Position numbers and translations under genes: made by a program. DNA of 64,000 nucleotides, taken from IMG/VR virus record IMGVR_UViG_3300036846_000743, positions 124,001 through 188,000 of that record, one strand, 5' to 3'. Positions 1 through 49,946 of this stretch are shown piece after piece. The notes beneath the pieces are model-generated. The model was not told the DNA's origin. It ran no database searches and saw nothing but the letters and a program-made list of their open reading frames with translations. Position 1 is the stretch's first letter, and every line of letters starts with the position of its first letter.

Positions 1-1329
1 GCCGTCGACACCGGCATGAAAGCTCTCCGGGGTGACCAGGGGATCGATCAGGCCGAAGTGCGACGGCTGAACGTTGCGAGCTTCGGCGGGGATTGCATCA
101 AGCGAAGGAATCCCTCCAGTGCCCAGCCGGCTGACCCGGGCCTGCTGGTCGAAGATCATGGCCGGGTTAATTCCCTCGGTGGGCTGGCCCAGGCCGCTGG
201 ACTGGATAGCGGCGTTGATATTCCGGGTCAGTAACTCGGCCGGGATGTGCTTGAGGCTCCCGGTCATGGACGCTTTCCAGAGGACCTTGCCCAGAAGCAT
301 GCGGTCCTTGCCGACCCGCTCGGATAACAGATCTTCGGGACCCATGGCGTACATGTAGGCCAGGTGATCACGGTCATCGGGTTCTGCTTCTTGTTTGTTT
401 ATCGCAGCCAGTTTCCTGGTGGTATCCAGCATCTGATCCAGCGAGACCTTGTCGTACGGCTTACCGAGGGTCCGCCTGGTGACCTCTGGGTCGAGCTTCA
501 TGGCCTCGAACGCTTCGCGGACTTCCTGCTCCTGGGTCTTGGTCGGATCAGGTTTGCGAACCAACCGGCTATGCAGCTTACCGATGACCGATGGATCATC
601 CTTGAGCATGTTGGGCTGGTAGAGATCACCCCAGGCTTCGCGAAGCTGCTTGTCGCTGGCCCCCATGGCATGGAGCAAGGACGTCAAGGGCATCTTGGAC
701 TGACCGACTTTGAGGCGGAACACGCCGGTCTCGGGCTCCATGAAGATCCGGTGCGCGGCACCCTGGCCGGGCATGACGTTCACATGGGCTTCGAGTTCGC
801 CGTTGGCCTGGCGGCGAGTAAAGACGCCGGGCCGGAGCCTGAGCTGGTGAGCCAGCGTATATTCGGACCCATTCTGGATAAAAGTCCCGTGATCGGTCAG
901 GTACGGGATCGTAGCCACGGTGGATCGTTTCTGATCGATGACCGCGCCGGTCGCGTTATCACGCAGCGTCCAGGTGCCCCGGAGCCGGGCCCCCAGACTG
1001 CGGCCTCCCAGGATGGCCTTCTTCCAGTCGGCCTTGCCGTACCGCTGCGCGCCTTCATAGCCGACGTCGTCAAGGGTCAGGGTGTGTCGCTGGTTCGAGA
1101 CCGGCGGGATCTTGCCAGCTGCCTCCTTGACGCGATCGAAGATCCGGCTCCGGATCGCGGCCGCATCGCCAAAGGCACGAAGGCCGGCCGGAGCGTGTGC
1201 CGGCAAGGCGGGTGATCGCTCAACACCCTGTTCCTTGTGCGTGCCGTCGTTGATCCTGCCGTCGCCGTCACCGTCTCGCGGGACGCTGGACAGCGATCCC
1301 AGGGCCGACTCTGCCAGAACGCTAGGCAC
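1..1329 (-). CDS. rpoB: Phage-encoded multisubunit RNA polymerase beta subunit (N-terminal part; runs off the left edge)
   Basis: Not in ORF track; translated by hand from GTG at 1329, with SD AGGAGG at 1335-1340 overlapping the upstream TAA. Contains IPYLTDHGTFIQNGSEYTLAHQLRLRPGVF (RpoB GTFIING..Q..R.PG), DDRDHL (DDIDHL) and NPAMIFDQQARVSRLGTGGIPSLDAIPAEARNVQPSHFGLIDPLVTPES (RpoB fork-loop region). Confidence 0.9.
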   Translation of the reverse strand, partial: MPSVLAESALGSLSSVPRDGDGDGRINDGTHKEQGVERSPALPAHAPAGLRAFGDAAAIRSRIFDRVKEAAGKIPPVSNQRHTLTLDDVGYEGAQRYGKADWKKAILGGRSLGARLRGTWTLRDNATGAVIDQKRSTVATIPYLTDHGTFIQNGSEYTLAHQLRLRPGVFTRRQANGELEAHVNVMPGQGAAHRIFMEPETGVFRLKVGQSKMPLTSLLHAMGASDKQLREAWGDLYQPNMLKDDPSVIGKLHSRLVRKPDPTKTQEQEVREAFEAMKLDPEVTRRTLGKPYDKVSLDQMLDTTRKLAAINKQEAEPDDRDHLAYMYAMGPEDLLSERVGKDRMLLGKVLWKASMTGSLKHIPAELLTRNINAAIQSSGLGQPTEGINPAMIFDQQARVSRLGTGGIPSLDAIPAEARNVQPSHFGLIDPLVTPESFHAGVDG

Positions 1330-1339
1330 AGGGCCCTCC

Positions 1340-2470
1340 TTACTTGGGGTGCGGCTGTACCAGTTGCTGTCCAGCGACGCGGCCCAGCGATCCAGCCAGG
1401 CTGGGTAATTGCGGCGGGGACGGCTCTGCCGGCTTCTCGGGCTTCGCCGGCTTGCCATCGGTCGGCGTCATGAGCCGGTTCCAGACGGCCATCTGATTGG
1501 CCTTGATCCGGTTCAGGAATTGGTCGGCCGCCTGGCCGACACTGGCGTGCTTCTCTTTCTTCGCCGGCTCCTCGTCTGGTTCCTTCCTGGCCCCGAACGC
1601 ACGGTGCCAGATCGACGGCTTCGGCCGCATGATCGGTGTCGGCATCGGGATCGCCATGATCGGGCTCGGGGCCTGCTCGGCAATCTGGGCCTGCCGCCGC
1701 TTCACTGCCTCCTCGACGGCCTTGTCCTCGGCCGTTGATCTGGCCCAGTGATAACCACCCAGGCCGGCACCCAGCATGAGGCCGCCGCCCAGCGTCAGGG
1801 CACCACCCATAAGCGGACCGTACCAGCCTTCTGCCTGCTTCTCGTAGAGACTGGCCAGCACATCGAGCGAGCTGGGCTTCGGATCTGCCGAAGCCAGCTT
1901 GCGCCGGCCGGCCAGCGCACTCTCGTAGCCCTTGCGCGCCTCTTCCAGCTCACTCTCCTGCTCGGCCGTCCGGGTCTTGTCGAGCAGATAGTCAGTCAGC
2001 TTCCAGCCGCCATAGCCACCGGCGCCGACGGCTGCGACGCCAGCCGGAATGGCCCATGGCATGTCCAACGGACTTTTCGCGCCCCAGCCCCCCAGCCAGT
2101 TCTGGGCCGTATTCGCCACCTGACCGGGCCGACGAAGCAGACCCATCCAGTCGGCCACATGCCGCATGTCAAAAGCCAGCTTGGCGAACTCGGCCTCCTT
2201 CTCCTCTGTCGCTGCGAGCATGGCATCTCGCTCCGCAGGAGTGCGGACTGCGACCGGCACCGGAATTCGCACGAACGACTGGCGCATCGGAGTCCGCGCC
2301 GGGCCGCCCAGGTTGCGACCCAGGAAGTTGCCGACACCGGACATGGCTCGCGATCCGGCCCCGAGCGCCGTTGCTCCAAGGCCCAGCCCGATGATGGTGC
2401 GAAGCGCATCCACCTGGGCCTGGTTGTTGGGGCCAAGTCCCGTGCGGCCGAACAGATCGTCTATGGACAT
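1340..2470 (-). CDS. Glycine-zipper protein with K-x-A motifs, putative virion/ejection protein
   Basis: 376 aa; three Gly-rich hydrophobic hairpins (GLGLGATALGAG, AGVAAVGAGGYGGW, GGALTLGGGLMLGAGLGGYHW); motifs AKLA, RKLA, EKQA, EKHA; SD AAGGAGG. Confidence 0.75.
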   Translation of the reverse strand: MSIDDLFGRTGLGPNNQAQVDALRTIIGLGLGATALGAGSRAMSGVGNFLGRNLGGPARTPMRQSFVRIPVPVAVRTPAERDAMLAATEEKEAEFAKLAFDMRHVADWMGLLRRPGQVANTAQNWLGGWGAKSPLDMPWAIPAGVAAVGAGGYGGWKLTDYLLDKTRTAEQESELEEARKGYESALAGRRKLASADPKPSSLDVLASLYEKQAEGWYGPLMGGALTLGGGLMLGAGLGGYHWARSTAEDKAVEEAVKRRQAQIAEQAPSPIMAIPMPTPIMRPKPSIWHRAFGARKEPDEEPAKKEKHASVGQAADQFLNRIKANQMAVWNRLMTPTDGKPAKPEKPAEPSPPQLPSLAGSLGRVAGQQLVQPHPK

Positions 2471-10680: not shown

Positions 10681-13600
10681 TCAGCCGAAGAGACTCCAGG
10701 GCCGCTGATAGCCTGGCGACCCTACTCTGCGAAGAACTTCCCGGAATTGTTCGTTGAGTTCTTCTTTTCGCTCGGACATCCGCTCGAGCACCTCGTCGGC
10801 TGATGGCCGGGGCTTCTCGCCGAACACCTTGCCGAGCCAACCGGGCGGCGGCATCTTTGCAACAAACCGCTGTATCTTCACGTGTCGTAATTCCTCGGGC
10901 AAGCCTTCATGGCTGTCGAACCGCAGCCCGCGGCCGCGCGCCTGGCCAAGTCTGGCCTCATTCCAGTGCGGATCGAGTAGCTGGATCAGCTGGGTGCCCT
11001 TGGCCGAGATTCCCTCGGCGGCGGCTGGCCCCAGCAGGAGCACCCGGCTCCGGCCCGAGTTGTAGTCATCCAGCGCTTTCTTGCGGGCCTCTTCGGGCAT
11101 GCTGCCGTGGAATTGCCCGAACGGGATCTTGGCCTCAGCCAGGCCGGCGGCATAAGGCGTCAAGCCGGCGTCGATGAAGTTCGAATAGATAATGGCCTTG
11201 GCTCTCGGATCTTTCGCCAGAGTTTCTTGGAGATGGCTCATGGCCGACTGGAGCTTGGACGACGTCTGGAACGCCCGGATCGGGTCGTGCGACGAGTGAT
11301 ACGGATAGAGTGATAACGCAGCCTGACGTGGCCCCGTCATGAAGGCAGACAGATGGCCGATCTCCTGCTTGGTGAGCGGATAGTCGTTGGACAGCTTCCA
11401 GCGCATGAGCCAGGGGAGCTTGCCCCACATCAGCTTGTAGAAGTCCTGCTGCTCGGAGCCCATGTCGACTTCGACCCGCTCGTCCTTGGTCGAGACCCCT
11501 TCGGGAGTCCGGGACGGCTGATAGTCCACGTGCCCTTCGAGCATGCGCTCCAGGTCTTCCTCGTTCTGGATCTTGGGCACCTTGACCGGTTTGACGCCCT
11601 GGAGCCAGCCGAAGAACCCGGGATTGACCGTCTCGTTGCCAACATACTTCTTGGTGAACGCGCCCGGACTCATCTCCTCGCCGCGCAGGATCGATAGCGG
11701 CACGGCCAGATCACTGGGTGCGTTCACGATGGGCGTGCCCGAAAGCAAGATCCGGTGCGGGGCTCGCATGCCCAGCTCCATCGCGGCCCGGGCACCGGCC
11801 GACTGCGGGTTCCGGATCCGCTGAACTTCGTCCATGATGACGGTGTTCGGCGTGACCGATGGCTGCTTACCCATGCCAATCCCAGTATATGACATCACGT
11901 TGGTCGGTGTAGACTGATCAGTAAATTTACCTAATTCCTTGAGGTAATTACCTCTGAGGCTCGCCGGCACGACAGCTGTGAATGGCCCGCCGGTCTCCTC
12001 GGCGGCAGCCAGGCTGGCCAAGGACTTTCCTGAGCCCAGACCATGGTAGACCAGCAGGTTCTGGCCCTCGCCGACCCGTTTGGCCACGCGTTCCTGCTGG
12101 GGCTGGAGCCGGACCCAGGGCAGCAGGTCGGCCCGCTTCTCGCCCCAACTGTGACCACACCTGTTGCACTTACCGTCGTCCGGATCGCGCTCGAGCCGGG
12201 CATGGCACTTCGGGCAGCACTCGCCGGCCGGACACGGGTCGCCCTTCTCGTCGGTGGGGCTGCCGACGGCCCGGGCCCAGGCAGCAGCCTTCGCAGGCAA
12301 AAGCCTGATCCTGGACTTGTCGATCGGGTCTCCCTTCGGGGCCTTCTCTCCGTTATAGACCACGGCATCCAGGTCTTCCGGTGTCACGCGCACGGCCCTG
12401 ATATGACTCAGTCCCTCATCGATGTGCCGGGACAGGCGGTGCCGGCCATCCCAGAGCGTACCATCGATGCCAACCAGAATTGGCTTGTTCATGTTGACGG
12501 CAGCGTATCGCTTCTTCGAATAGCCAGTGCTTGCCGACCGGTTGGGCTTCTCGATGTCGCCCAGGGGAATGTTCTCGACCTTGCGCCCGGCCGTACGGCT
12601 GACCAGGTCATCGATGTCGTAGGTCTTGCCGCCCCTGCTGACGGTGTTGGTGCGAACCCAGTCGGCGACCTTGAGCCGACCACCGACCATGGCGAGGGAA
12701 GCATGGATCCTGAAGCCCGTCGGCTTGTGAGTCAGGCCGGCCATGTCCCGGATGGTCGAGTCGATCTTGAACTCACTGGGGCGCTCGTGGATCAGCCTGG
12801 AGAGGATCTGGTACTTGGCACGGTAATTCTTCCGGTCACTCTCGGCCTTGGCCAGCTTCAGGTCGGCCAGGGCCGGATGCACCTTGGCGGTCTTCTCTTC
12901 CTCTTCTTCGATCTGCTGGATGACCTCGGGGATGATCGCATTGGGTTTGCCCAAGAGCGATCCCTGGATCGCGTCCCACCATGATGGGGCCGGCGGCGGC
13001 AGCCGGCGACGACTGCGCGGGGTGACAACAGGAGGTGGCGGATCAGTGATCCCGAGCAGCCCGGCCAGCTTCAGCGTCGCAGCAGTGTCAGCATGGCTGG
13101 CCACCTTGTTGATGTCTTCGTGCAGGCCCAGGAACGACGGCACCCGCAGGGCGCCTGATGGCAGCTTCTGCTGCGCGCGGACCCGGGCCACCCGGCCGAT
13201 ATAAGCCGACGGGTCCCTGGCGATGTCGGCCAGGGTCTCGTCGCTGAAGCCCGTGCCAACCCGGCCCACGGTCTTGCCCGGCTCATGGCCGTAGGTCAGG
13301 CCGCCCACAGTCGCAGCCCGCTGGCCTTCGCCCGGAAAAGTCCCGGTGACGTGTACATCGTGTTCCTCGAAGAGCTTGGCCTTCGAGGGCACGCCGGTTC
13401 TGGGATGATAGACAATTCCCTCTTCGGTAAGAGGATGTTCACCCGATCGGATCATGTCCCAGAGCTTGGTTGCGCTTGCTGGATCTCTGAATTCCTCGGA
13501 GACGTGGAACTTATCTGAAGGCAGGTGTCCAGCAATCTCTTCAAGCATTCGCCGACGATCTGATCGGGATGTAACGGCGGGATCGATGGGCTTCTTGCCG

Positions 13601-16600
13601 TACTGCTGAACGTCGTAGAGCATGTTGCGAAGCGTGAGGCCCTTTGCCTTCTGGAGCTGGAGACTGCGCGCAATACTGGAATTAAGTAGCTGGCCGACAT
13701 CCTGGGGACCGGTTCGGCGAGTTGTGACTTCAGGATCGCCTGGAAGGCCAGCAGCCCCGCTGCCACGCGGTGTTCCGTTGGCGTGTACCGTTTCCAGCCC
13801 TTCATGGCCCGTACCCACATCCGGACCACCATCAGGCGATCTTCGTCCAGTCTCCGTATCCGGTTGCGTTGCCTTACTTCCTCCTCCTGGTTGTAGTCGT
13901 GAGGCATACAGCTCGCCCTTCAAGATCGATCCTTCGAGGTGCCTGGGGACCGGGACCTCGGGGCGCCCGCCAAACAGGCGTTCCGTGTGGAAGATGGGCC
14001 GGCCGGTTGTCTTCGACGTCCTGAAGGATAACGCCTCGGCATGACCGCCTGCTAGTCTGATGAGCTGACTGGCGCCATCGACCTTGGCTTCTACCGTGTC
14101 GCCTTCCTGCATAGCTTTCAGGGCTGGCTCGACATCTTCGGGCGCGATCTTCTTGTAGCGAACTTTTTCGTAAGGGACCTGGTCCCGAGGGGTCGTGTTC
14201 ATGAGCAGCCAGTTCTTGTTGCCCCAGCCCTTGGGCCGGACCAGCGTGAACCGCTCGGGATGTCTCTGATGGGCCGTCGTGAAGTGTATTGACTCAGGAG
14301 TGGCTTTCGTGATCAGGATCTGGCCCTTGGTATGGGTCTTGACCGTGCCCTTGCCGTAGCCCTGGGGAATTTCTCCCTCGAAATTCCCGTACTCATGCCG
14401 ATGCACGGGCTGCTGCACGGCAAGATGTCGTTCCCCCGGTGGGGGTACTCCCTTGCGCGCGGCCCAGGAGAGCAGGCCCATGTCCGGGTTGCCGAACCTG
14501 ATGTCATGATGAAGACCCGCGCGCTCGGCTTCGTGCCTTTGCACTATGTAGTCCAGCATCTGGCCAACCTGGAGCTTATCAAGCTGGCCCATGTTGGACC
14601 TGGACGGCAGCCCGGGAGCGTAGTCGGCTTCGGCCTTCTTGCCCAGCTGGTAAGCCAGCGCCGGCGCTGCGACGCCACCAGCGATCATGCCGAGCATCGA
14701 CATGAGATTGCGGCGGCGCTCCTGCCGGCGCCGCTCGTAGTAGTCAAGCTCATCCTCGTCGTCGGGCGACACGACCCCGCCCAGCGCGCCGCCGAGCAAG
14801 TGACCACCCAGGAGGCCGGCGCCAGCGGCCCCGGCCAGGGTCAAGACCCGGTTGCGGATCTCGGGATCGGCCCAGCTCTCGCGTACCCCTGCCCACATGC
14901 CGGCCTGGGTTGCCGGCCGCGCCGCCGCCAAGAAGTCGGCTGGCCTGGGCGACCCGGCCGCCCTGGCAGCCACCGCGATGGGATCCTGCGATAGCGCCGC
15001 TCCGGGGCCAAGGCCCAGCCAGCTGCGGGCCTGCTGCTGTACCGTGTTGGCCGTCTGTCTGGCGATCTGGGACTGCATCTCCGGGCGGCTCGCGATATCG
15101 ACGGCCATGCTCTGGAACTCGGGCTTCTGGGCCATCTCGAGCAGCTTTGCTTGCAGCGCCGGATTGTTTGCCGCCTGCGAGATAACTTTCTGCCCTTCCG
15201 GAGTGCTGGCGAAGTTCGTGAGCGCCTGCACGACTTCGGGCTTCTGGGCCATCTCGCCCAGCACTTTCTGTCCCTCCGGGGTGCTGGCATAGTTCGTGAG
15301 CGCTCCCGTGACTTCGGGCTTCTGGGCCATCTCGCCCAGTGTTTTTCGCCCTTCCGGAGTACCGACATACTTCGTGAGTGCCCCTACGACTTCGGGCTTC
15401 TGGGCCAGCCCGCTTATGGTCTTCTGTCCCTCCGGGGTACCAACATACTTCGTGAGTGCCCCCATGACTTTGGGCTGCTGCGCCAACCCGCCCAGCGCCT
15501 TCTGTCCCTCCGGGGTACCGGCGTAGTTGCCAATGGCCTCCGTAACTGCGGGCTGCTGCGCCAGCCCGCCCAGTGTCTTCTGTCCCTCCGGAGTACTGGC
15601 GAAGTTGGTGATGGCCTCTGTAACTTCGGGCCGCTGGAAGAACCCGCCTATGGTCTTCTGCCCCTCTGGGGTGTTGGCGTAATTGGTGATGGCCCCCATG
15701 ACTTCGGGCTTCTGGAAGAGCCCGCCTATGGTTTTCTGCCCTTCTGGAGTGCTGGCATAATTCGTGATCGCTTTCGTGACTTCGGGCTGATCAGCCAGTC
15801 CAGCCAAGGTCTTTTGCATATCCGGATTGGTCAAGGACTGGGTAAACGCTTTCTGTACTGCTGGGTTGGCCGCGGTATTCGCAAGGAACTGCTGCATCTT
15901 GGGATCGTTCAGGGTCTGCGACAGCATCGCCTGGCCCTGGGGATTGTTCAGCTGCTCCCCGATGAACTTCTGCGTCTCGGGACTGGTCACAAGCTGTTGC
16001 ACGCCCTTCTGGACAACCGGACTATCCATCACGTGCTGCCGCATCCGGGGATCGGTGAGTGTCCGGGTGAGCGGCTGAACGATCGGGCTGGTCATGCTGG
16101 CAATCGGGTTGGCCTTCATCTCGGGCGTGTACTTGGCTATGGCCTCATCGACAGCCTTCTGGTAAATGGGCGCGGGATCCTCCTTCATGGGGATGAACTG
16201 GCCGGCCGCACTCATCGCGAGACCGAACGGCGAGGCCAGCCGGGCAGCATCCACGAAGCCCATGGTATTGGGATACTTCTGGCGCGCCGTGTAATAGTCG
16301 TGCCGCAGGAACGGGATCGTGGACTTGGCAGCCACGTCGCCCACCATCTTGCCGATGGCCGACTCGTCGGGCTTGCCGGTAACCCAGCTCACTCCCGGAA
16401 TATTCCGGGAAGCCCAGCTCACTCCTGGAATTCTGTGCAGCAGCTGGGTTGCCACCGGGCCGCGCAGGCCCCGCAGTTCCTCCTTGGCCCACGGCTGCTT
16501 CAACTCCTTGATGCCTGCTTCCGACAATCCCAGCCCCCTGCCCAGCATGGTCGCTTCCTGGCTCTCGAAGACCGGCTGCGTCGCCATGTTGTAGCCGGCC

Positions 16601-19600
16601 AGGCCCAGGCCAGTACCGGTCGCAGCAGTGCTCCCGTAACGCAGCGTCTGGCCCAGCGCCTGCCGCTGCCAGTCCCAGCGACGCTGCGGTGGCTGCGGGG
16701 CAGGGTTATTCAGGAGCTTACTCCACGGAGTAGTCGCAGCTTGCGGAACGCCACCTTTCGGGATGGGGACTTTGGGAGTGACTTCCCGGTGCAGGCCCGG
16801 GATCTGCGGGCTGAAGGTGAACCTGGCAGCATTGCCGGCGCCGATAAGAGGGCGCTTCCAGCCCTCGCCACTCACGCCCCAGAACTGACCCGGCGCCGCG
16901 CCGGACATGTGATACGCGCCACGGCCTATGGCACCAAGGCCCCCCTTGGCCCGTGACCACAGTCCTCCCGCCTCCTTGGTCATCGCCACCTTGAGATTGG
17001 GATCAATCCTGGCGACGTTGTGAACGAGCCCCGGCATCCGCCTGGTCGCAGCACCCTCGATAACCTGCCAGTCCGGCGCTGCAAACATATCCTTCCAGTA
17101 CTGCTCGTCGTCACCAAGGTTGCTCGGATTCAGGGTGTTCCACCATGAGTTGACGTGGCCCTTGAACCAGTCCAGCGCCTTCTTGGCCTCGGCCGGCGAT
17201 GTCACTTCCCTGCCGGTGTTCTGGGCATATACCCGCTTGACGAGGGCCAGCCGGGGATCAAGCTCGTCGGGCGAAAAGAGATAGTTCAGGTTATGTTTCG
17301 GTCCGAATGACGGCGTACCGCCCAGCGTCTTGACCAGCTTCTGCCCCGACGACGTGATCTCCGGATCAATCTTCGCGAGATTGGCCAGCTCCTTGGCCGT
17401 GCCTCCACGCTCAAGGACCCGCTTGATCGGCGCCATCTGCATTCCCGAGTGCGTCAGCTCGTGCCCCACGGTTTGCTGCTGATCGTGCACATTGACCAGG
17501 CTGTCCTTCGGCATCGTGATGACTGCCGGTGGCGCTGCTGGCCTGTTGACCATAGGCGTGGTCACGCCGGCGTAAGTCTCGTTTTCCGCGCCCGGTATCG
17601 CGATCCCTTTAGGGAGCTTGACGGTCTTCCCGGGCACCTCGACGACCGGTACCTTGGTGTGAAGATCCTCAGCCTTCCAGGGAACCGAGGGGATCGACGG
17701 AGCATAGGGCACCTGCTTGCCTTCCGCTCGCCGGATGACCCCTTCGACACCGCCCTCCATCTTCCCGTAATACGGATCGAGGCTCTCGGCCAGGCTCTTC
17801 ATCTTCGCCCCGGGAGGTACCACGTAAGGCGCATCCGGCGCGGGAGCTACAGGCGGCTGCTGCTGTTGCTGCTGCTGTAGCCGCTGTGCCTTGGCCCTGC
17901 CGATGTAGTAGGCCCCGCCCAGGCCACCCAGACCGGCGCCGTAGATCACGTCGCGTAACGGGTCTTCGCTGCCGAAGAGCTTCCCGAGCCCCCAGCCGCC
18001 CAGGCCGCCGGCACCAGCGCCGATCAGCATCGGAGCATAGTCCTTGAAGTCGCCTTGCTTCTCGCCAAGCCGGGCCAGCCAGCCGACCGCGCGGCCCCTG
18101 TCACCGCGCTGCCGCAGCCGATCCATGAACTCGACCAAAGGATCGCTATCTTCGCCATCTTCGTCATCATCTTCGCCAGCGCCGTCTGGCTTGGGGAAGG
18201 ATATCCGGGTGATGGAGATTCGCTGTATCGAGATCGGTATCCTGATCTTACGTCCGCCGTTATCTTCGCCATTATGTACATCGTCGCTAGCCCCACTGTG
18301 TACATCTTCGTCATCATCTTCGCCGTCGGTGGTTGTAGCTACTTTGGCTATCGAGACGGTATTCCCAGCATCTCCTCGACCGTCCAGCCATTGTGCAACC
18401 GATCGTAGAGGGTGCTCACGGGAATACCCAGCTGCGATGCCCATTGACCGATTGTCTGTTTCTTTCCGTGGAAGGAGAACTGGCGCCGTGGCTGCTTTGG
18501 TCGTGAAAGCGGTATTCCCCGTGACAATCGATAAGTCACGTGTGCCCGCGAGCAACCCAGCAGACGAGCTGCGTCCGCCGTACTCATCTTCTGGCCGTCG
18601 AATTCGACCCAGTGAGTCGTCCGTCGGGGCCGACCACGTGGCGTTAGAATTGCCTCCTCGTCTGTCCAGCCGAGCCTCACTATGCGTCCGCGGAGTACCG
18701 TCGGATGCAAGCCAGTCCGTTCGGCCCACTCGGCGATCGTCCGAGTCTCGCCCTGGCATGTCAGCAGCCGATTGGTTCGCGTATTTCGTGCTTGCGCTTT
18801 CCGTGATGCCCAAATGCAGTTTGCTTTGGAATAGCCCTTGCTGTTTTCCTTTCGCTCGAGGGTCATTCCCGCCGGCCGATCTCCCATGTCCCGGTAGAAC
18901 GCCATGAAGCGCCGCTGCCAACTTTGACACACCGTAATTCCGCGCCCGCCATAATTCTTGTAACCGCGGCTCGTCGGATTCAGACAACGCTCCTTCATCT
19001 TGCACCAAGTCGTGTACGCTCGCGTCTTGACCAGACCGTGATACTGCCGTTTGATCATTGGCCGCCTTGCTGACTTCGTTAGGTTTGAGAACATTGCGAC
19101 GTCTTACACCTATAGTGATGTGAAATTCATGATCACCATTGGGCAAAGGAGTCAGACCATAGCTCTTCCGCAGGGCCTTGAGATCGGAAGAGCTAACCCG
19201 TACAAACCACGCCTTGGACATCTCGGGCCAGCCCTTGGGTTCGACTTCCATGATCGGTCCAAGTTGATAACTGAACGGATGACCACGTTCACTTATCTTG
19301 TCAGGACCACCGATCTTTTTGACATCCTGATCGGTGAGGGCGCTAATATGGGCGTTGAGCACGCCGTCTCGCAGCGGCAATTCAGCGCCTGGCGCTTCGA
19401 GCGCATCGAATAATCCCCTAACAAGTGCATTGGGGACGCTGACCAAACCCCAGCCGCTCGCACTGACATATAACCGACCATGGAGTATGGGTACCGCCAC
19501 CGGGGCGCCGCCTGCCTTGATCAACATACCGTAAGCTGCGGCGACCTGGTAATAGTCCAGGTCTTCGGCTGCCCGGCGGCGAGCCAGTGTGGCCGGATCG

Positions 19601-19614
19601 ATCGTGAGCGACAT
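10681..19614 (-). CDS. Giant multidomain polyvalent protein/polyprotein (2H phosphoesterase, Gly zippers, HExxH peptidase, helical repeats, LigD phosphoesterase, ATP-dependent DNA ligase, ParB-like, Zn finger, SNF2 helicase)
   Basis: 2977-aa uninterrupted ORF, SD AAGGAGG; domain motifs listed in the sub-features. Confidence 0.9.
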   Translation of the reverse strand: MSLTIDPATLARRRAAEDLDYYQVAAAYGMLIKAGGAPVAVPILHGRLYVSASGWGLVSVPNALVRGLFDALEAPGAELPLRDGVLNAHISALTDQDVKKIGGPDKISERGHPFSYQLGPIMEVEPKGWPEMSKAWFVRVSSSDLKALRKSYGLTPLPNGDHEFHITIGVRRRNVLKPNEVSKAANDQTAVSRSGQDASVHDLVQDEGALSESDEPRLQELWRARNYGVSKLAAALHGVLPGHGRSAGGNDPRAKGKQQGLFQSKLHLGITESASTKYANQSAADMPGRDSDDRRVGRTDWLASDGTPRTHSEARLDRRGGNSNATWSAPTDDSLGRIRRPEDEYGGRSSSAGLLAGTRDLSIVTGNTAFTTKAATAPVLLPRKETDNRSMGIAAGYSREHPLRSVAQWLDGRGDAGNTVSIAKVATTTDGEDDDEDVHSGASDDVHNGEDNGGRKIRIPISIQRISITRISFPKPDGAGEDDDEDGEDSDPLVEFMDRLRQRGDRGRAVGWLARLGEKQGDFKDYAPMLIGAGAGGLGGWGLGKLFGSEDPLRDVIYGAGLGGLGGAYYIGRAKAQRLQQQQQQQPPVAPAPDAPYVVPPGAKMKSLAESLDPYYGKMEGGVEGVIRRAEGKQVPYAPSIPSVPWKAEDLHTKVPVVEVPGKTVKLPKGIAIPGAENETYAGVTTPMVNRPAAPPAVITMPKDSLVNVHDQQQTVGHELTHSGMQMAPIKRVLERGGTAKELANLAKIDPEITSSGQKLVKTLGGTPSFGPKHNLNYLFSPDELDPRLALVKRVYAQNTGREVTSPAEAKKALDWFKGHVNSWWNTLNPSNLGDDEQYWKDMFAAPDWQVIEGAATRRMPGLVHNVARIDPNLKVAMTKEAGGLWSRAKGGLGAIGRGAYHMSGAAPGQFWGVSGEGWKRPLIGAGNAARFTFSPQIPGLHREVTPKVPIPKGGVPQAATTPWSKLLNNPAPQPPQRRWDWQRQALGQTLRYGSTAATGTGLGLAGYNMATQPVFESQEATMLGRGLGLSEAGIKELKQPWAKEELRGLRGPVATQLLHRIPGVSWASRNIPGVSWVTGKPDESAIGKMVGDVAAKSTIPFLRHDYYTARQKYPNTMGFVDAARLASPFGLAMSAAGQFIPMKEDPAPIYQKAVDEAIAKYTPEMKANPIASMTSPIVQPLTRTLTDPRMRQHVMDSPVVQKGVQQLVTSPETQKFIGEQLNNPQGQAMLSQTLNDPKMQQFLANTAANPAVQKAFTQSLTNPDMQKTLAGLADQPEVTKAITNYASTPEGQKTIGGLFQKPEVMGAITNYANTPEGQKTIGGFFQRPEVTEAITNFASTPEGQKTLGGLAQQPAVTEAIGNYAGTPEGQKALGGLAQQPKVMGALTKYVGTPEGQKTISGLAQKPEVVGALTKYVGTPEGRKTLGEMAQKPEVTGALTNYASTPEGQKVLGEMAQKPEVVQALTNFASTPEGQKVISQAANNPALQAKLLEMAQKPEFQSMAVDIASRPEMQSQIARQTANTVQQQARSWLGLGPGAALSQDPIAVAARAAGSPRPADFLAAARPATQAGMWAGVRESWADPEIRNRVLTLAGAAGAGLLGGHLLGGALGGVVSPDDEDELDYYERRRQERRRNLMSMLGMIAGGVAAPALAYQLGKKAEADYAPGLPSRSNMGQLDKLQVGQMLDYIVQRHEAERAGLHHDIRFGNPDMGLLSWAARKGVPPPGERHLAVQQPVHRHEYGNFEGEIPQGYGKGTVKTHTKGQILITKATPESIHFTTAHQRHPERFTLVRPKGWGNKNWLLMNTTPRDQVPYEKVRYKKIAPEDVEPALKAMQEGDTVEAKVDGASQLIRLAGGHAEALSFRTSKTTGRPIFHTERLFGGRPEVPVPRHLEGSILKGELYASRLQPGGGSKATQPDTETGRRSPDGGPDVGTGHEGLETVHANGTPRGSGAAGLPGDPEVTTRRTGPQDVGQLLNSSIARSLQLQKAKGLTLRNMLYDVQQYGKKPIDPAVTSRSDRRRMLEEIAGHLPSDKFHVSEEFRDPASATKLWDMIRSGEHPLTEEGIVYHPRTGVPSKAKLFEEHDVHVTGTFPGEGQRAATVGGLTYGHEPGKTVGRVGTGFSDETLADIARDPSAYIGRVARVRAQQKLPSGALRVPSFLGLHEDINKVASHADTAATLKLAGLLGITDPPPPVVTPRSRRRLPPPAPSWWDAIQGSLLGKPNAIIPEVIQQIEEEEEKTAKVHPALADLKLAKAESDRKNYRAKYQILSRLIHERPSEFKIDSTIRDMAGLTHKPTGFRIHASLAMVGGRLKVADWVRTNTVSRGGKTYDIDDLVSRTAGRKVENIPLGDIEKPNRSASTGYSKKRYAAVNMNKPILVGIDGTLWDGRHRLSRHIDEGLSHIRAVRVTPEDLDAVVYNGEKAPKGDPIDKSRIRLLPAKAAAWARAVGSPTDEKGDPCPAGECCPKCHARLERDPDDGKCNRCGHSWGEKRADLLPWVRLQPQQERVAKRVGEGQNLLVYHGLGSGKSLASLAAAEETGGPFTAVVPASLRGNYLKELGKFTDQSTPTNVMSYTGIGMGKQPSVTPNTVIMDEVQRIRNPQSAGARAAMELGMRAPHRILLSGTPIVNAPSDLAVPLSILRGEEMSPGAFTKKYVGNETVNPGFFGWLQGVKPVKVPKIQNEEDLERMLEGHVDYQPSRTPEGVSTKDERVEVDMGSEQQDFYKLMWGKLPWLMRWKLSNDYPLTKQEIGHLSAFMTGPRQAALSLYPYHSSHDPIRAFQTSSKLQSAMSHLQETLAKDPRAKAIIYSNFIDAGLTPYAAGLAEAKIPFGQFHGSMPEEARKKALDDYNSGRSRVLLLGPAAAEGISAKGTQLIQLLDPHWNEARLGQARGRGLRFDSHEGLPEELRHVKIQRFVAKMPPPGWLGKVFGEKPRPSADEVLERMSERKEELNEQFREVLRRVGSPGYQRPWSLFG
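10750..12135 (-). other. SNF2/SF2 helicase domain of polyprotein
   Basis: LQPQQ Q-motif, HGLGSGKS Walker A, IMDEVQRIRN, LLSGTP, IIYSNF, AEGISAKG, DPHWN, QARGRGLR. Confidence 0.9.
12150..12260 (-). other. Zinc finger in polyprotein
   Basis: CPKCHARLERDPDDGKCNRCGH (CxxC...CxxC). Confidence 0.7.
12340..12660 (-). other. ParB/Srx-like domain of polyprotein
   Basis: KPILVGIDGTLWDGRHRL, matching the ParB-N DG.HR signature. Confidence 0.7.
13100..14190 (-). other. ATP-dependent DNA ligase (adenylation + OB domains) of polyprotein
   Basis: EAKVDG (motif I), LKGELY (III), MLYDV (IIIa), EEGIVY (IV), KAK (V); OB fold with GRVGTGFSDE and ALRVPSF. Confidence 0.85.
13452..13907 (-). CDS. Possible nested +1-frame ORF within the ligase insertion
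   Basis: Over ~13700-13907 codon bias favours this frame (CAC GAC TAC AAC CAG GAG GAG) over the host frame (TCA CGA CTA CAA CCA GGA GGA). Confidence 0.4.
   Translation of the reverse strand: MPHDYNQEEEVRQRNRIRRLDEDRLMVVRMWVRAMKGWKRYTPTEHRVAAGLLAFQAILKSQLAEPVPRMSASYLIPVLRAVSSSRRQRASRFATCSTTFSSTARSPSIPPLHPDQIVGECLKRLLDTCLQISSTSPRNSEIQQAQPSSGT
14200..14620 (-). other. LigD-type 3'-phosphoesterase (PE) domain of polyprotein
   Basis: YIVQRHEAERAGLHHDIRF..LLSWAARKG..RHLAVQQPVH..EYGNFEGEIPQGYGKGTV matches the LigD_N consensus. Confidence 0.9.
15142..15765 (-). repeat. Eight tandem 78-nt (26-aa) coding repeats
   Basis: TNYAxTPEGQKTxGxLAQKPEVxxAL; first and last TPEG at 15750 and 15204 are 546 nt = 7x78 apart; degenerate 13-aa units extend to ~16050. 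Confidence 0.9.
17040..17700 (-). other. Zincin-like metallopeptidase domain of polyprotein
   Basis: VGHELTH (HExxH at 17449-17463) with downstream YLFSPDELDPRL as candidate third ligand. Confidence 0.6.
18348..19058 (-). mobile_element. HNH-type homing endonuclease gene overprinted in the +1 frame inside the polyprotein ORF
   Basis: WCKMKERCLNP..YKNYGGRGITVC..W..FMAFYRDMGDRPAGMTLERKENSKGYSKANCIWA..Q.RN, then two HTH-like repeats (GETRTIAEWA, GKKQTIGQWA); likely start ATG 19058 after AAGGCGG (track start 19094). Confidence 0.85.
19090..19510 (-). other. 2H phosphoesterase domain of polyprotein
   Basis: Two H-x-S/T motifs: NAHIS (19348) and FHITI (19120), with spacing typical of LigT/Acb1-like enzymes. 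Confidence 0.7.
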
Positions 19615-27621: not shown

Positions 27622-27843
27622 TCACCCACCAGGATGCAACTTGGCCCTGACCGCGGCGTCCTTGGCTTCCAGGAGCTTCCTGAGCGCCACGGTCCGCTCA
27701 GGCCCTGACTCTATCTGCGCACAAATGATCTGCGCCAGGTTCGAGAAGCACGACGATACTTCCTGGAGATGCTTTGGAAGGTGAGCGAACTCGAACCACT
27801 TCAGCATGCGGTCAGGTTGGTCAGGCATTATTTCCTCCGGCAT
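27622..27843 (-). CDS. Conserved small phage helical-hairpin protein
   Basis: WFEFAHLPKHLQEVS..F..LA......GPERTVALRKLLEAKDAAVRA, a recognisable widespread phage family. Confidence 0.8.
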   Translation of the reverse strand: MPEEIMPDQPDRMLKWFEFAHLPKHLQEVSSCFSNLAQIICAQIESGPERTVALRKLLEAKDAAVRAKLHPGG

Positions 27844-47951: not shown

Positions 47952-49946
47952 TCAGACATCCACTATCCGCACCCGCCGAGGTCGCTTCAGCATCAGCCCC
48001 GTCGGCACCGGCAGCGGTGCCGCCGCGCCTTGCTTGCCATACTGCTGGGCTAGTACCTGCTGTCCTCCCTGCATCTGGGCCTCCTGCTTCTGGTCGTCCA
48101 TCCGCGACTTGACGAGCGCGTGCAACGTAGGATCAGTCTTCTTGAGGGAGATCAGCTCGCTCTGTCGCTGACTGTCGGGCAGGCTCTGAAGCTGGCCCGC
48201 GATCTCCTCGGCCTTGGCCATCAGTTCCTGGGGTGTAACCGGCGTATTGGCACCACCACCTGCTGCGCCAGCGGCCCCTCCACCGCCTGGAGGCGCGCCA
48301 CCCGGAGGAGCGCCGCCACCGCCGCCAGCGTCCGGAGGTGCACCTCCTGCTGGAGCACCTCCCGGCGGCGCTCCACCCGCAGCAGCGCCTTGGACCGCCT
48401 GTTGCATCTGTGCTTCATCGGCCATCTCCTCCTGCATCTTCTGGGTCTCGTCGGCAACGAACTTCTCTTCCTCCAGCATCTGCTTCTGCTCATCCTCGAA
48501 GTCCATGCCGACCGAGCGAAGCCCGGTGGTTTGCGAGATCTGCTTGCCCATCATGAGCTGGAGCTTGGCCGCCTGACGGTTCATGTCGTCGGCGTGAGTG
48601 ACCTTCATGAGCCGCGCGGTGACTGGCTCCCAGTTCAAAGCCTTGGCGAGCGATTCGACCAGCCAGCCCAGGAAGCCATTCATGTTGTGCGTGAGCGGTG
48701 CCCAGTAGCTCTCGAAGAGCCGCAGGGCCGGCGGAGCCGCCGACATGGTCAAGGTCCCCTTGTACATGTCGGCCGGGATACCAGCTGCGTTCAACAGGTG
48801 ATCAATGCCCTGGTCAAGCAGGTCCTTGGGTGCCAGCTGGTTGGCATCGCCACCCATGGCCTTGTATTCCAGTGGGAACGGGATCACGTTCCAGCGGGCT
48901 GGATCTTTGCGGCGCGCCGCCAGCATGCGGTTCACCCGCGAGACGAACGTACCCATGTTGGCACCGAGCACGGGATCCTGGGCCGCCGGATCGGCAGCCC
49001 CGCCCTTGGACGCCGGCATGATCACCCGGAATGGGATCACGTAGTCCAGGGCGATGGCTTCGTTGTATCTGTGCAGGACCTGGACGTACCAAGCCTGGCC
49101 GAAGTTCGACAGGACTTTCGAGATGCCCCAGCCCTTGTTGCGGACACCGGCTAGAGCATCGTCTTTCATGTGATAGATGATGCCGGGGTCGAACTGGAGC
49201 ATCTTGTTGTTCTTGACCGCCTGGATCACTTCCCAGTTGGCACGCTCGAGATGGAACAGCTTGCCGCGGCGAATGTCCTGCCGGTAGTCCTCGGGGATCT
49301 TCCAGATGTAGGACGTATCGTCGGTCAACGTGTCATAGAGGATCTCCATGTAGTGGGGGTCCCACCGCTTGACATGAACGTCCGCTTCCTCGCCAGAGCG
49401 ACGATCGATGTGATGCCAGGCGCCGTTGTAATTGCACTCCGAGTTGGGACACTTGGCATGGAAGTCGAAGTCCTGCCACTGAAAGTGGAAGTCAGGTGTG
49501 CTGTAAACTTTTCGTAAGGGCCACTCGGTATAGCAGCGAGGGCAGCTCAGATAGCGCCGGAACGGTATAACTACAGATGTGAATGAGTTTCCGTAGCATG
49601 CATAGTCCGTGGCCACGTAGTTCAGGACGCTCTTGTAGTCGATCGTCTCGTCAAGGAACTCCTTGAATTTATCTTTCTCCTCGCGGCTGGCATCCTGGGA
49701 GCTGACTTCGATATCGGTGATGAAGTAAGAGACGATGCGCCTCATGGCCTCCCGGTACACGCCCATCTTGCTAAAGATGAACTCGCACCAGTACATTATA
49801 TCTCTGGGATGCTCAGGCATCACAGTTGAAGCCATGTCGCAAAATGGATCTGGGAAATTCTCGCTGCCTCGCATCGTGAAGTTCCCCGATGCGAAGAGCT
49901 TGTTGTCGCTGACGGTAAGACTCATCGTGTCGTCCTTGACGGCCAA
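47952..49946 (-). CDS. Probable portal protein with zinc-ribbon insertion
   Basis: DYACYGNSF and IYHMK..LAG...WGISKV resemble portal motifs; CPRC..CPNSEC insert; Q/E coiled coil and G/P-rich tail; possible start at 49925. Confidence 0.6.
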   Translation of the reverse strand: MAVKDDTMSLTVSDNKLFASGNFTMRGSENFPDPFCDMASTVMPEHPRDIMYWCEFIFSKMGVYREAMRRIVSYFITDIEVSSQDASREEKDKFKEFLDETIDYKSVLNYVATDYACYGNSFTSVVIPFRRYLSCPRCYTEWPLRKVYSTPDFHFQWQDFDFHAKCPNSECNYNGAWHHIDRRSGEEADVHVKRWDPHYMEILYDTLTDDTSYIWKIPEDYRQDIRRGKLFHLERANWEVIQAVKNNKMLQFDPGIIYHMKDDALAGVRNKGWGISKVLSNFGQAWYVQVLHRYNEAIALDYVIPFRVIMPASKGGAADPAAQDPVLGANMGTFVSRVNRMLAARRKDPARWNVIPFPLEYKAMGGDANQLAPKDLLDQGIDHLLNAAGIPADMYKGTLTMSAAPPALRLFESYWAPLTHNMNGFLGWLVESLAKALNWEPVTARLMKVTHADDMNRQAAKLQLMMGKQISQTTGLRSVGMDFEDEQKQMLEEEKFVADETQKMQEEMADEAQMQQAVQGAAAGGAPPGGAPAGGAPPDAGGGGGAPPGGAPPGGGGAAGAAGGGANTPVTPQELMAKAEEIAGQLQSLPDSQRQSELISLKKTDPTLHALVKSRMDDQKQEAQMQGGQQVLAQQYGKQGAAAPLPVPTGLMLKRPRRVRIVDV

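What the first reader, a model, noticed from the sequence alone, without database searches (positions are those of the whole stretch)
10750..14620. NHEJ-like repair kit (LigD phosphoesterase + ATP ligase + ParB + Zn finger + SNF2) fused into a probable virion-delivered protein
Seen: LigD-PE, ligase, ParB-like and SNF2 motifs in series, in the same chain as membrane glycine zippers. Established: LigD-PE heals 3' ends for ligation, and phage polyvalent proteins often carry SNF2, ParB and metallopeptidase domains. A PE-ligase pair inside such a protein is unusual to my knowledge. Inference: the enzymes are injected with the genome to circularise it or to repair nicks and breaks from restriction, CRISPR or other nucleases before phage gene expression.
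Basis: partly seen in the sequence, partly recalled or inferred. Interest (0 to 1): 0.72.

Follow-up and report, generated by a model that had tools for sequence, protein, structure and literature searches.

The report
Giant phage protein carrying DNA-repair enzymes
One 2977-residue protein of an uncultivated 226-kb soil phage joins an intact DNA end-cleaning enzyme and the phage's only DNA ligase to a ParB-like domain, a zinc ribbon and a SNF2 motor; gene context suggests it travels in the virion with the phage RNA polymerase, but it is not a true NHEJ system.

Summary
Window 10681-19614 (-) is one ORF of 2977 aa. Its C-terminal half, which is the flagged stretch, holds five parts in series:
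- a LigD-type 3'-phosphoesterase (PE);
- a minimal ATP-dependent DNA ligase;
- a ParB/Srx-fold domain;
- a Cys6 zinc ribbon;
- a SNF2 ATPase.
All catalytic motifs are intact.

Upstream in the same chain lie a 2H phosphoesterase, two glycine-zipper hydrophobic pairs, an invariant HExxH region and 26-aa repeats.

- The genome has no Ku and no LigD polymerase domain, so this looks like end healing plus nick sealing, not NHEJ. Circularisation was not tested.
- Virion delivery gains indirect support. The gene lies between the portal and RNA polymerase genes. The only isolate homologue of its SNF2 part, Salmonella phage Arash gp217, is abundant in purified virions.

New findings:
- PE-ligase is a mobile ~450-aa cassette. 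It has 644 clusters at 50% identity and occurs on about 65 IMG/VR contigs, but in none of 50,697 deposited phage records (mostly isolates).
- The cassette stands alone or is fused repeatedly, in either order, to SNF2, 2H, peptidases, InPase and once to RNA polymerase beta'.
- It often sits beside the phage multisubunit RNA polymerase.
- It is the only ligase detected in this genome.

Verdict: a new variant of the polyvalent-protein kind.

The parts
10681..19614 (-). Whole ORF, 2977 aa plus stop (P0001): a polyvalent multidomain protein.
   Evidence: Relatives of 1716-3517 aa share the architecture. The database gene call starts later, at M391 (2587 aa). However, the 2H domain lies upstream in the same frame and is N-terminal in relatives.
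19090..19371 (-). 2H phosphoesterase domain (2H-SAK), aa 82-175, with both HxS/T motifs (H89-I-S and H165-I-T).
   Evidence: Pfam PF22547 at E 1e-9. Motif positions.
17887..18033 (-). First glycine-zipper pair, aa 528-576 (overlapping GxxxG motifs).
16975..17697 (-). Zincin-like region, aa 640-880, with invariant H-E-L-x-H (aa 718-722) and an invariant downstream glutamate.
   Evidence: Alignment of 7 copies (A6). No Pfam match at E<=1, so this rests on motifs only.
15186..15789 (-). Array of 78-bp (26-aa) tandem repeats, 7.7 copies (TPEGQK...), inside a GerD-like helical region at aa ~1195-1500.
14650..14847 (-). Second pair of glycine-zipper hydrophobic segments, aa 1590-1612 and 1637-1655.
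   Evidence: Hydropathy peaks of 1.47 and 1.57.
14197..14559 (-). LigD-type 3'-phosphoesterase (PE), aa 1686-1806. Residues H1694, H1702, D1704, R1706 and H1738 are invariant in 91 homologues; Y1742 is nearly invariant.
13108..14160 (-). Minimal ATP-dependent DNA ligase (nucleotidyltransferase plus OB), aa 1819-2169. Motif I is K1844-V-D-G. The other conserved positions are R1865, E1901, E2065-G, K2078/K2080 and R2157. A disordered insert spans aa 1922-1960.
   Evidence: It is the only phrog_114 match in the genome.
12655..13017 (-). Conserved region of unknown function after the ligase, aa 2200-2320. It follows the cassette in many relatives.
   Evidence: Local phmmer 'lnk' hits. No family match.
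12364..12648 (-). ParB/Srx-fold domain, aa 2323-2417, with invariant D-G-R-H-R (aa 2389-2393).
   Evidence: (phrog_17560).
12157..12234 (-). Zinc ribbon, Cx4CCx2C...Cx2C, aa 2461-2486. These are the only cysteines in the protein.
10732..12135 (-). SNF2-family ATPase, aa 2494-2961. Motifs: GLGSGKS at 2525, DEVQ at 2595, QARGRG at 2891.
   Evidence: Full-length homologue of Arash gp217 (32% identity).
47952..49946 (-). Context: portal protein homologue, upstream on the same strand.
   Evidence: tblastn to Arash gp204 (portal), E 1e-58.
1..1458 (-). Context: start of the multisubunit RNA polymerase beta gene, which runs out of the window. The rest of beta and beta' follow downstream.
   Evidence: Arash gp206 at E 7e-91 and 1e-111; gp216 at E 3e-46.

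Best explanation
P0001 is a polyvalent, polyprotein-like protein of a jumbo phage that encodes its own multisubunit RNA polymerase.

Shown:
- Its C-terminal half carries a catalytically intact 3'-phosphoesterase fused to a minimal ATP-dependent DNA ligase, a ParB/Srx domain, a zinc ribbon and a SNF2 ATPase.
- The PE-ligase pair is a conserved, mobile ~450-aa cassette and is the only ligase detected in this genome.
- The cassette and the SNF2 module are repeatedly fused to each other, and the cassette is linked by position or fusion to the RNA polymerase genes.

Inferred:
- The protein is made late and packaged with the RNA polymerase and SNF2 module in the head.
- It is possibly cut at its linkers by its own zincin-like domain or by the head protease.
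- It enters the cell with the DNA.
- There the PE domain removes 3'-phosphates or 3'-ribonucleotides from damaged ends, and the ligase seals the resulting nicks.
- The SNF2 motor and the ParB/zinc-ribbon parts load on or travel along the incoming DNA.
- The result is that the genome stays intact and transcribable before phage genes are expressed.

This is healing and sealing of nicks and clean breaks, not Ku-dependent end joining.
For: Enzymes:
- Searches give the PE and ligase folds, with every catalytic residue invariant in 91 homologues.
- Searches give the ParB/Srx fold.
- One search gives the zinc ribbon and the glycine zippers.

Polyvalent syntax:
- The same cassette is fused to 2H-SAK, SNF2, InPase, NUDIX, GNAT, C39 and zinc peptidases, in varying order.
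- On a tree of 61 loci the architecture changes at least 21 times.
- These partners are the repertoire described for injected polyvalent proteins in PMC5512222.

Virion link:
- The gene lies between the portal and the RNAP beta/beta' genes on one strand.
- Arash gp217 matches only this SNF2 domain in the genome. It sits next to RNAP beta' inside the head gene block.
- It is abundant in purified virions: 38 peptides and 1148 spectra, against 1333 spectra for the major capsid protein (PMC10585845).

RNA polymerase link:
- 24 of 65 cassette loci have RNAP within 10 kb, all on the same strand.
- In L064 the fused beta-beta' RNAP gene ends 6 nt before the cassette gene.
- The L020 ORF is RNAP beta' C-terminus plus PE plus ligase in one frame.

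Separate role from replication:
- 8 of 23 related large records keep the cassette although they also carry a second ligase, NAD-dependent or ATP-dependent.
Against: - There is no direct evidence of packaging, processing or timing for this uncultivated phage.
- The Arash virion proteome also lists obvious non-structural enzymes, so carry-over is possible.
- In 21 of 61 loci the cassette is a stand-alone gene, and in about two thirds of the records it is the only ligase. Both fit an ordinary intracellular ligase.
- The RNA polymerase neighbourhood may be inherited synteny within one clade rather than a functional link.
- The zincin assignment rests on motifs only.
- Promoter and terminator scans gave nothing above chance.
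Confidence: 0.42

Rival explanations
1. The PE-ligase is the phage's ordinary intracellular replication and recombination ligase. It seals Okazaki fragments and repair nicks, with PE cleaning blocked 3' ends. Its fusion to SNF2, ParB and the rest is an expression convenience, and the protein acts after synthesis in the infected cell, not from the virion.
For: - It is the only ligase detected in a genome that CheckV rates 100% complete and that has its own DNA polymerase, primase and helicases.
- 15 of 23 related records also show no second ligase.
- The cassette stands alone in 21 of 61 loci.
Against: - 8 of 23 relatives keep the cassette beside a canonical NAD-dependent or ATP-dependent ligase.
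- The gene sits in the portal-to-RNA-polymerase block, not with the replication genes.
- It shares a chain with glycine-zipper hydrophobic segments, a peptidase-like region and counter-defence-type domains.
- The SNF2 homologue is abundant in virions.
Confidence: 0.3
2. The kit works on RNA or on nucleotide signals rather than on DNA breaks. 2H plus PE would heal 2',3'-cyclic-phosphate or 3'-phosphate RNA ends left by host anticodon nucleases, and the ligase would reseal them. Alternatively, 2H degrades cyclic-oligonucleotide immune signals.
For: - The 2H-SAK domain co-occurs with the cassette in about 30 of 159 representative proteins (Pfam-confirmed in P0040 and P0049).
- One relative also carries LigT_PEase, RNA_ligase and AAA_33 hits.
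- The 2H-SAK family is named after RNA-repair proteins (PMC7824862).
- The cassette is tied to an RNA polymerase.
Against: - The ligase has the OB domain and motif VI of DNA ligases, and it matches DNA ligases in both sequence profile and fold.
- P0001 has no 5'-kinase domain.
- PMC5512222 notes that the 2H domains of polyvalent proteins do not associate with RNA ligases and proposes RNase or signal-degrading roles instead. The 2H domain may therefore act independently of the ligase.
Confidence: 0.13
3. True NHEJ-type joining of the genome's two ends, or of double-strand breaks. The phage or host would supply an end-bridging factor.
For: - PE followed by ligase is the arrangement found in bacterial LigD (my own knowledge).
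- Mycobacteriophages Corndog and Omega use a phage Ku with host LigD to circularise (my own knowledge: Pitcher et al. 2006; not retrieved here).
Against: - The genome has no Ku and no LigD polymerase domain.
- The ligase is no closer to LigD than to archaeal, Lig1-type or phage ligases.
- 8 of 23 relatives assemble with direct terminal repeats, which points to terminal redundancy rather than end joining.
Confidence: 0.07
4. The long ORF is an artefact: fused neighbouring genes, a chimeric assembly or a read-through.
For: - The database gene call is shorter, at 2587 aa.
- Residues 180-520 are low-complexity.
Against: - The frame is open for 8934 nt.
- Independent relatives from other samples have the same order of domains, including the N-terminal 2H.
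- An independent Logan assembly of a soil run holds 99% of the sampled words of window 12000-16000.
Confidence: 0.03

Closest known systems
Bacterial DNA ligase D (LigD) with Ku: prokaryotic NHEJ
   Same: - A PE domain lies directly upstream of an ATP-dependent ligase domain.
- The PE catalytic residues correspond to P. aeruginosa LigD H42, H48, D50, R52, H84 and Y88. The alignment to 3n9b is; the residue roles are from my own knowledge of the Shuman laboratory's work.
   Different: - No primase-polymerase domain and no Ku.
- The PE is closest to archaeal stand-alone PEs (3p4h, 3p43).
- The ligase scores best against archaeal Lig1-type ligases, and LigD does not reach E 0.01 in the profile search.
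- It is embedded in a 2977-aa phage protein.
Polyvalent proteins of phages and conjugative elements (Iyer et al. 2017, PMC5512222); archetype: phage P1 DarB/DdrB
   Same: - Many unrelated enzymatic domains in one giant polypeptide.
- SWI2/SNF2, ParB/Srx, 2H and metallopeptidase-type domains, with shuffled domain order.
- Encoded near virion genes. P1 DarB is a head component that protects the injected DNA.
   Different: - It carries a PE-ligase cassette, which that study does not report.
- No DNA methylase accompanies the SNF2.
- The canonical Pfam MPTase is not matched.
- The SNF2 is the RNA-polymerase-linked type.
RNA-polymerase-linked SNF2 helicase of jumbo phages (PMC7824862); Salmonella phage Arash gp217
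   Same: - 32% identity over the full 472 aa of gp217, and it is the sole homologue in this genome.
- It is encoded in the portal and RNA polymerase head block.
- The Arash protein is abundant in virions.
   Different: - In Arash it is a stand-alone 472-aa protein next to RNAP beta'.
- Here it is the C-terminal module of a 2977-aa protein, about 9 kb upstream of RNAP beta.
- Arash has no PE-ligase cassette.
Archaeal stand-alone LigD-PE homologues (Candidatus Korarchaeum 3p4h, Methanosarcina barkeri 3p43)
   Same: They are the best sequence matches for the PE domain (E 9e-22 and 2e-19 with the profile).
   Different: They are stand-alone small proteins of cellular organisms and are not fused to a ligase in the solved constructs.
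Minimal ATP-dependent DNA ligases (Chlorella virus, Lig E) and the T4 and archaeal ligases
   Same: A nucleotidyltransferase plus OB core, with motifs I, III, IV, V and VI.
   Different: - A PE domain replaces the N-terminal DNA-binding domain.
- A disordered insert of about 40 aa sits in the nucleotidyltransferase domain.

Membership tests
LigD / Ku NHEJ system | 3'-phosphoesterase domain with its His/Asp/Arg/Tyr active site | tested here: met
   LigD_N at E 6e-14. H1694, H1702, D1704, R1706 and H1738 are invariant and Y1742 is nearly invariant in 91 homologues.
LigD / Ku NHEJ system | ATP-dependent ligase domain | tested here: met
   Profile and fold matches, with motifs I-VI invariant.
LigD / Ku NHEJ system | Primase-polymerase (AEP) domain | tested here: not met
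   PF21686 has no match in the genome at E<=1, and none appears in P0001.
LigD / Ku NHEJ system | Ku end-binding partner | tested here: not met
   PF02735 has no match in the complete 226-kb genome at E<=1. Host Ku cannot be assessed.
Polyvalent proteins (Iyer et al. 2017) | Several biochemically unrelated domains in one large polypeptide of a phage or mobile element, with variable order among relatives | tested here: met
Polyvalent proteins (Iyer et al. 2017) | Zincin-like MPTase hub domain | tested here: inconclusive
   HELxH and a downstream Glu are invariant in 7 copies, but there is no Pfam match at E<=1. The Atlas search gives only weak LPD leads at 0.83.
Polyvalent proteins (Iyer et al. 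2017) | Encoded by a portal-terminase phage in a virion gene context | tested here: met
   TerL, portal and baseplate genes are present. The gene lies between the portal and the RNA polymerase genes.
Polyvalent proteins (Iyer et al. 2017) | Packaged in the virion and delivered with the DNA | not testable with these tools
   Only indirect evidence: the SNF2 homologue is in Arash virions.
ParB/Srx superfamily | ParB/Srx alpha+beta fold with a conserved active-site arginine | tested here: met
   All 50 best Foldseek matches are ParB/Srx-fold proteins (probability 0.9-1.0 for most, E about 2e-3 at best). DGRHR is invariant. There is no Pfam ParB match.
SNF2 ATPases | Two RecA-like lobes with Walker A, DExx and motif VI | tested here: met
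   SNF2-rel_dom plus Helicase_C; phrog_62 at E 3e-29; GLGSGKS, DEVQ and QARGRG present.
RNA repair (healing and sealing, T4 Pnkp/Rnl type) | RNA ligase (no OB domain) with a 5'-kinase | tested here: not met
   The ligase is of the DNA-ligase type with an OB domain. P0001 has no kinase domain.

The most novel reading that the evidence does not exclude
The PE-ligase cassette is a dedicated partner of the virion-borne multisubunit RNA polymerase and its SNF2 motor. Together they would form a LigD-like 'polymerase, phosphoesterase, ligase' machine delivered with the genome. In it, the RNA polymerase plays the part of the missing LigD polymerase by filling in or extending with ribonucleotides at nicks and gaps, PE trims to a ligatable 3' end, and the ligase seals. 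That would be a transcription-coupled repair system for incoming phage DNA.
Probability: 0.12. Interest if true: 0.85.

Novelty: new variant of a known kind. Interest (0 to 1): 0.62.

Why it matters
Phages are known to carry proteins into the cell that block restriction or start transcription. A delivered enzyme pair that physically mends the incoming genome would be a different kind of counter-defence: repair rather than evasion.

The cassette defines a large family with no experimental characterisation that I could find. It has 644 clusters at 50% identity and occurs on about 65 viral contigs. It is confined to uncultivated jumbo phages that encode RNA polymerases, and it is absent from 50,697 deposited phage records (mostly isolates).

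Its repeated fusion to the RNA-polymerase-linked SNF2 motor, and once to RNA polymerase itself, gives a concrete and testable link between phage transcription and DNA nick repair. The cassette is small enough (~450 aa) to express and assay directly.

Tried and rejected
- Nucleotide searches of the gene against phage and plasmid records found no match.
- A protein search of aa 1660-2977 against phage records hit only the SNF2 part and nothing for PE-ligase.
- PHROG and Pfam scans of ten neighbouring ORFs found only glycosyltransferases.
- A Pfam whole-genome search with PF01068 missed even the known ligase domain, so it is a weak negative. It was replaced by phrog_114.
- The ParB region gave nothing by Pfam or by profile against PDB sequences. 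It needed a fold model.
- The genome-contig scan for cellular relatives failed with the alignment and found none with the single protein.
- Sigma-70 promoter and terminator scans were at chance level.
- Literature searches for phage LigD, PE or polyvalent combinations returned nothing relevant.
- The 2016 RNA-repair paper that named the 'Swiss army knife' proteins is not held.
- Only one sequencing run, a soil metagenome that is probably the source, holds the sequence, and no RNA run does.
- No complex prediction was run, because the RNA polymerase subunits exceed the size limit and no binding claim depends on it.
- I considered and rejected the ideas that the ORF is a chimera and that the domains are catalytically dead.

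Full report
**What is there**

The flagged stretch 10750-14620 lies inside one ORF, window 10681-19614 on the minus strand. It encodes 2977 aa (P0001).

The window is part of a 226,073-bp IMG/VR virus record from a soil metagenome:
- CheckV rates it 100% complete; it has 61% GC and no tRNA genes.
- It has phage hallmarks: large terminase, baseplate wedge, portal, ribonucleotide reductase, DNA polymerase, primase and one multisubunit RNA polymerase set.

**Domains, from the N terminus**

- 2H phosphoesterase (2H-SAK), aa 82-175, with both HxS/T motifs.
- A disordered acidic region.
- A glycine-zipper pair, aa 528-576.
- A region with an invariant HELxH and a downstream Glu. It is zincin-like at motif level only.
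- A run of 26-aa repeats.
- A second hydrophobic glycine-zipper pair, aa 1590-1655.
- Then the flagged series, described next.

**PE domain, aa 1686-1806**

It matches LigD_N at E 6e-14. With a 91-sequence profile it matches the archaeal PE structures 3p4h and 3p43 at E 9e-22 and 2e-19. H1694, H1702, D1704, R1706 and H1738 are invariant, and Y1742 is nearly invariant. These align with the active-site residues of P. aeruginosa LigD PE (the residue roles are from my own knowledge).

**Ligase, aa 1819-2169**

It is weak by single-sequence Pfam but clear by other means:
- phrog_114 at E 1e-14.
- The profile matches P. furiosus ligase 2cfm at E 1.5e-8 across the nucleotidyltransferase and OB domains.
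- The model has pLDDT 88 and pTM 0.81, and its best Foldseek matches are ATP-dependent DNA ligases.
- Motif I (K1844-x-D-G), R1865, E1901, E2065-G, K2078/K2080 and R2157 are conserved.

**ParB/Srx domain, aa 2323-2417**

Pfam does not find it, but it is confirmed by fold. All 50 best PDB matches are ParB/Srx-fold proteins, such as ParB N-domains, sulfiredoxin and Noc. DGRHR is invariant.

**Zinc ribbon and SNF2**

The zinc ribbon uses the only six cysteines in the protein. The SNF2 ATPase, aa 2494-2961, has all its motifs.

**The cassette is a mobile unit**

A full-library search with aa 1670-2200 found 644 clusters (at 50% identity) with E<=1e-30. The 150 best align over the whole PE-ligase unit at 42-80% identity, in proteins of 390 to 2913 aa. 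About 65 IMG/VR contigs, many of 150-226 kb, carry the full unit in ORFs of 430 to over 1800 aa. None of 50,697 deposited phage records (mostly isolates) carries it at E<=1e-5.

Of 61 usable loci, 21 have it alone and 40 have it fused at the N side, the C side or both. The architecture changes at least 21 times on the cassette tree.

Fusion partners:
- 2H-SAK, and SNF2 in either order (SNF2-PE-ligase and PE-ligase-...-SNF2);
- ParB, InPase, NUDIX and GNAT;
- C39 and zinc peptidases, and histidine phosphatase.

This is the vocabulary and the shuffling described for polyvalent proteins (PMC5512222). That paper does not mention LigD or a DNA ligase as cargo, and my literature searches found no description of phage PE-ligase fusions.

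**Not NHEJ proper**

The genome has no Ku and no LigD polymerase domain. The ligase is no closer to LigD than to other ligases. Eight of 23 related records assemble with direct terminal repeats. I therefore read the pair as end healing plus nick sealing.

**Only ligase**

phrog_114 hits only this gene in the genome, and no NAD-dependent ligase is found. This supports the rival that it is simply the phage's ligase. Against that, 8 of 23 related large records keep the cassette beside a second ligase. Three of those have an NAD-dependent ligase and five have another ATP-dependent one.

**Link to the virion and to RNA polymerase**

- The only isolate homologues of the C-terminal region hit the SNF2 part. 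The best are Salmonella phage Arash gp217 and a Pseudanabaena phage helicase. gp217 aligns over its full 472 aa with aa 2498-2961 and with nothing else in this genome.
- In Arash, gp217 follows RNAP beta' (gp216) inside the block from the portal to the major capsid gene. LC-MS/MS of purified virions found it with 38 unique peptides and 1148 spectra. For comparison, gp216 gave 1210 spectra and the major capsid protein 1333 (PMC10585845). That proteome also lists clearly non-structural enzymes, so carry-over cannot be excluded.
- This genome shares with Arash the portal (window 47952-49946), RNAP beta and beta' (just below the window) and a structural protein, all on one strand. P0001 lies between the portal and the RNA polymerase.
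- Independently, 24 of 65 cassette loci have a multisubunit RNAP gene within 10 kb, always on the same strand.
- In five loci a stand-alone cassette gene lies just downstream of a giant fused beta-beta' RNAP gene. In L064 the gap is 6 nt.
- In L020, RNAP beta' C-terminus, PE and ligase share one 1436-aa ORF.
- Twenty-two of 23 large cassette-bearing records encode RNAP beta, and the 23rd has an RNAP hit by tblastn.
- Related genomes share synteny, so these counts are not independent events. The fusions, however, are.

**Mechanism**

Shown: intact PE, ligase, ParB/Srx, zinc ribbon and SNF2 in one chain. Also shown: a mobile cassette, repeated fusion of the cassette with SNF2, and fusion or adjacency of the cassette to the RNA polymerase genes.

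Inferred: packaging with the RNA polymerase, possible cleavage at linkers, delivery with the DNA, removal of 3' blocks and sealing of nicks so that the incoming genome stays intact and transcribable.

My confidence in the enzymatic assignments is about 0.9. My confidence in the whole model is 0.42.

Rivals:
- ordinary intracellular ligase, 0.30;
- RNA- or signal-directed kit, 0.13;
- true end joining or circularisation, 0.07;
- artefact, 0.03.

**Possible processing sites**

A short motif K-[VLAMI]-A-[ATMSG] occurs 7 times in P0001, against 1.8 ± 1.4 in shuffles. All seven lie at domain boundaries: after 2H, after the zincin-like region, twice just after the ligase, after ParB, and twice in the disordered region. 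Among homologues it follows the ligase end in 22 of 95, with 15 of those at +2 to +5. It also precedes the PE start at -8 to -12 in 15 of 101. I defined the pattern after seeing it, so it is a lead, not a result.

**Novelty**

This is a polyvalent protein, which is a known kind, with a cargo that has not been described: a PE-ligase cassette tied to the phage RNA polymerase and SNF2 module. I rate it a new variant of a known kind, with interest 0.62.

Noticed in passing
window 10681-19614; aa 231, 373, 424, 875, 2170, 2182, 2442 of P0001: A short motif K-[VLAMI]-A-[ATMSG] recurs at the boundaries of unrelated domains: 7 occurrences against 1.8 ± 1.4 in shuffles. The same motif flanks the PE-ligase cassette in many homologues. 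These may be proteolytic processing sites or a linker signature. The pattern was defined after it was seen.
   Followed up: partly
window 15186-15789 (-): An array of 78-bp (26-aa) tandem repeats, 7.7 copies, inside the ORF (TPEGQK... units). Pfam reads it as GerD-like. Its function is unknown.
   Followed up: partly
L078:400-9072, L064:3372-9728, L059:13-5676, L021:31-5478, L025:28-4506: Related jumbo phages encode beta and beta' of the multisubunit RNA polymerase as one giant fused polypeptide, up to 2891 aa. Several carry LAGLIDADG (intein-type) inserts. The stand-alone PE-ligase gene lies just downstream.
   Followed up: partly
L020:7190-11497: A single 1436-aa ORF joins an RNA polymerase beta' C-terminal domain (Rpb1_5) to the PE-ligase cassette.
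   Followed up: yes
L014:9674-15295: The closest IMG/VR relative (1874 aa, 76% identity in the cassette) has an intein splicing-domain hit inside its SNF2 domain, at aa ~1471-1493.
   Followed up: no
window 47952-49946 (-) and 1-1458 (-): A portal homologue and the start of RNA polymerase beta bracket the region. The gene order portal ... RNAP beta, beta', structural protein is shared with Salmonella phage Arash.
   Followed up: yes
window 21424-23736 (-) and 27843-28766 (-): Two glycosyltransferase-like genes lie just upstream of the giant gene (770 aa with Glycos_transf_1; 307 aa with a weak PHROG hit). A glycosyltransferase holds the same position in the relative L013. This may reflect DNA or virion glycosylation.
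   Followed up: no
window 23752-27585 (-) and 33891-38612 (-): Two further very large ORFs (1277 and 1573 aa) on the same strand have no Pfam or PHROG match.
   Followed up: no
tails after the ligase domain in homologues such as P0013, P0026, P0027, P0032, P0034 and P0035: A second recurring short motif, roughly (S/T)-(D/E)-L-x-(D/E)-L-G-I, follows the cassette in many homologues. It could be a docking peptide.
   Followed up: no
window 18445-19614 (aa 1-390): The public gene call for this protein starts at M391 (2587 aa). That start would cut off the in-frame 2H domain, which relatives carry at their N terminus.
   Followed up: yes
whole genome G000: A 226-kb phage genome with no tRNA genes and 77% of its ORFs on one strand. 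It shows only one detectable RNA polymerase set, unlike phiKZ-type phages, which have two (the phiKZ comparison is from my own knowledge).
   Followed up: partly
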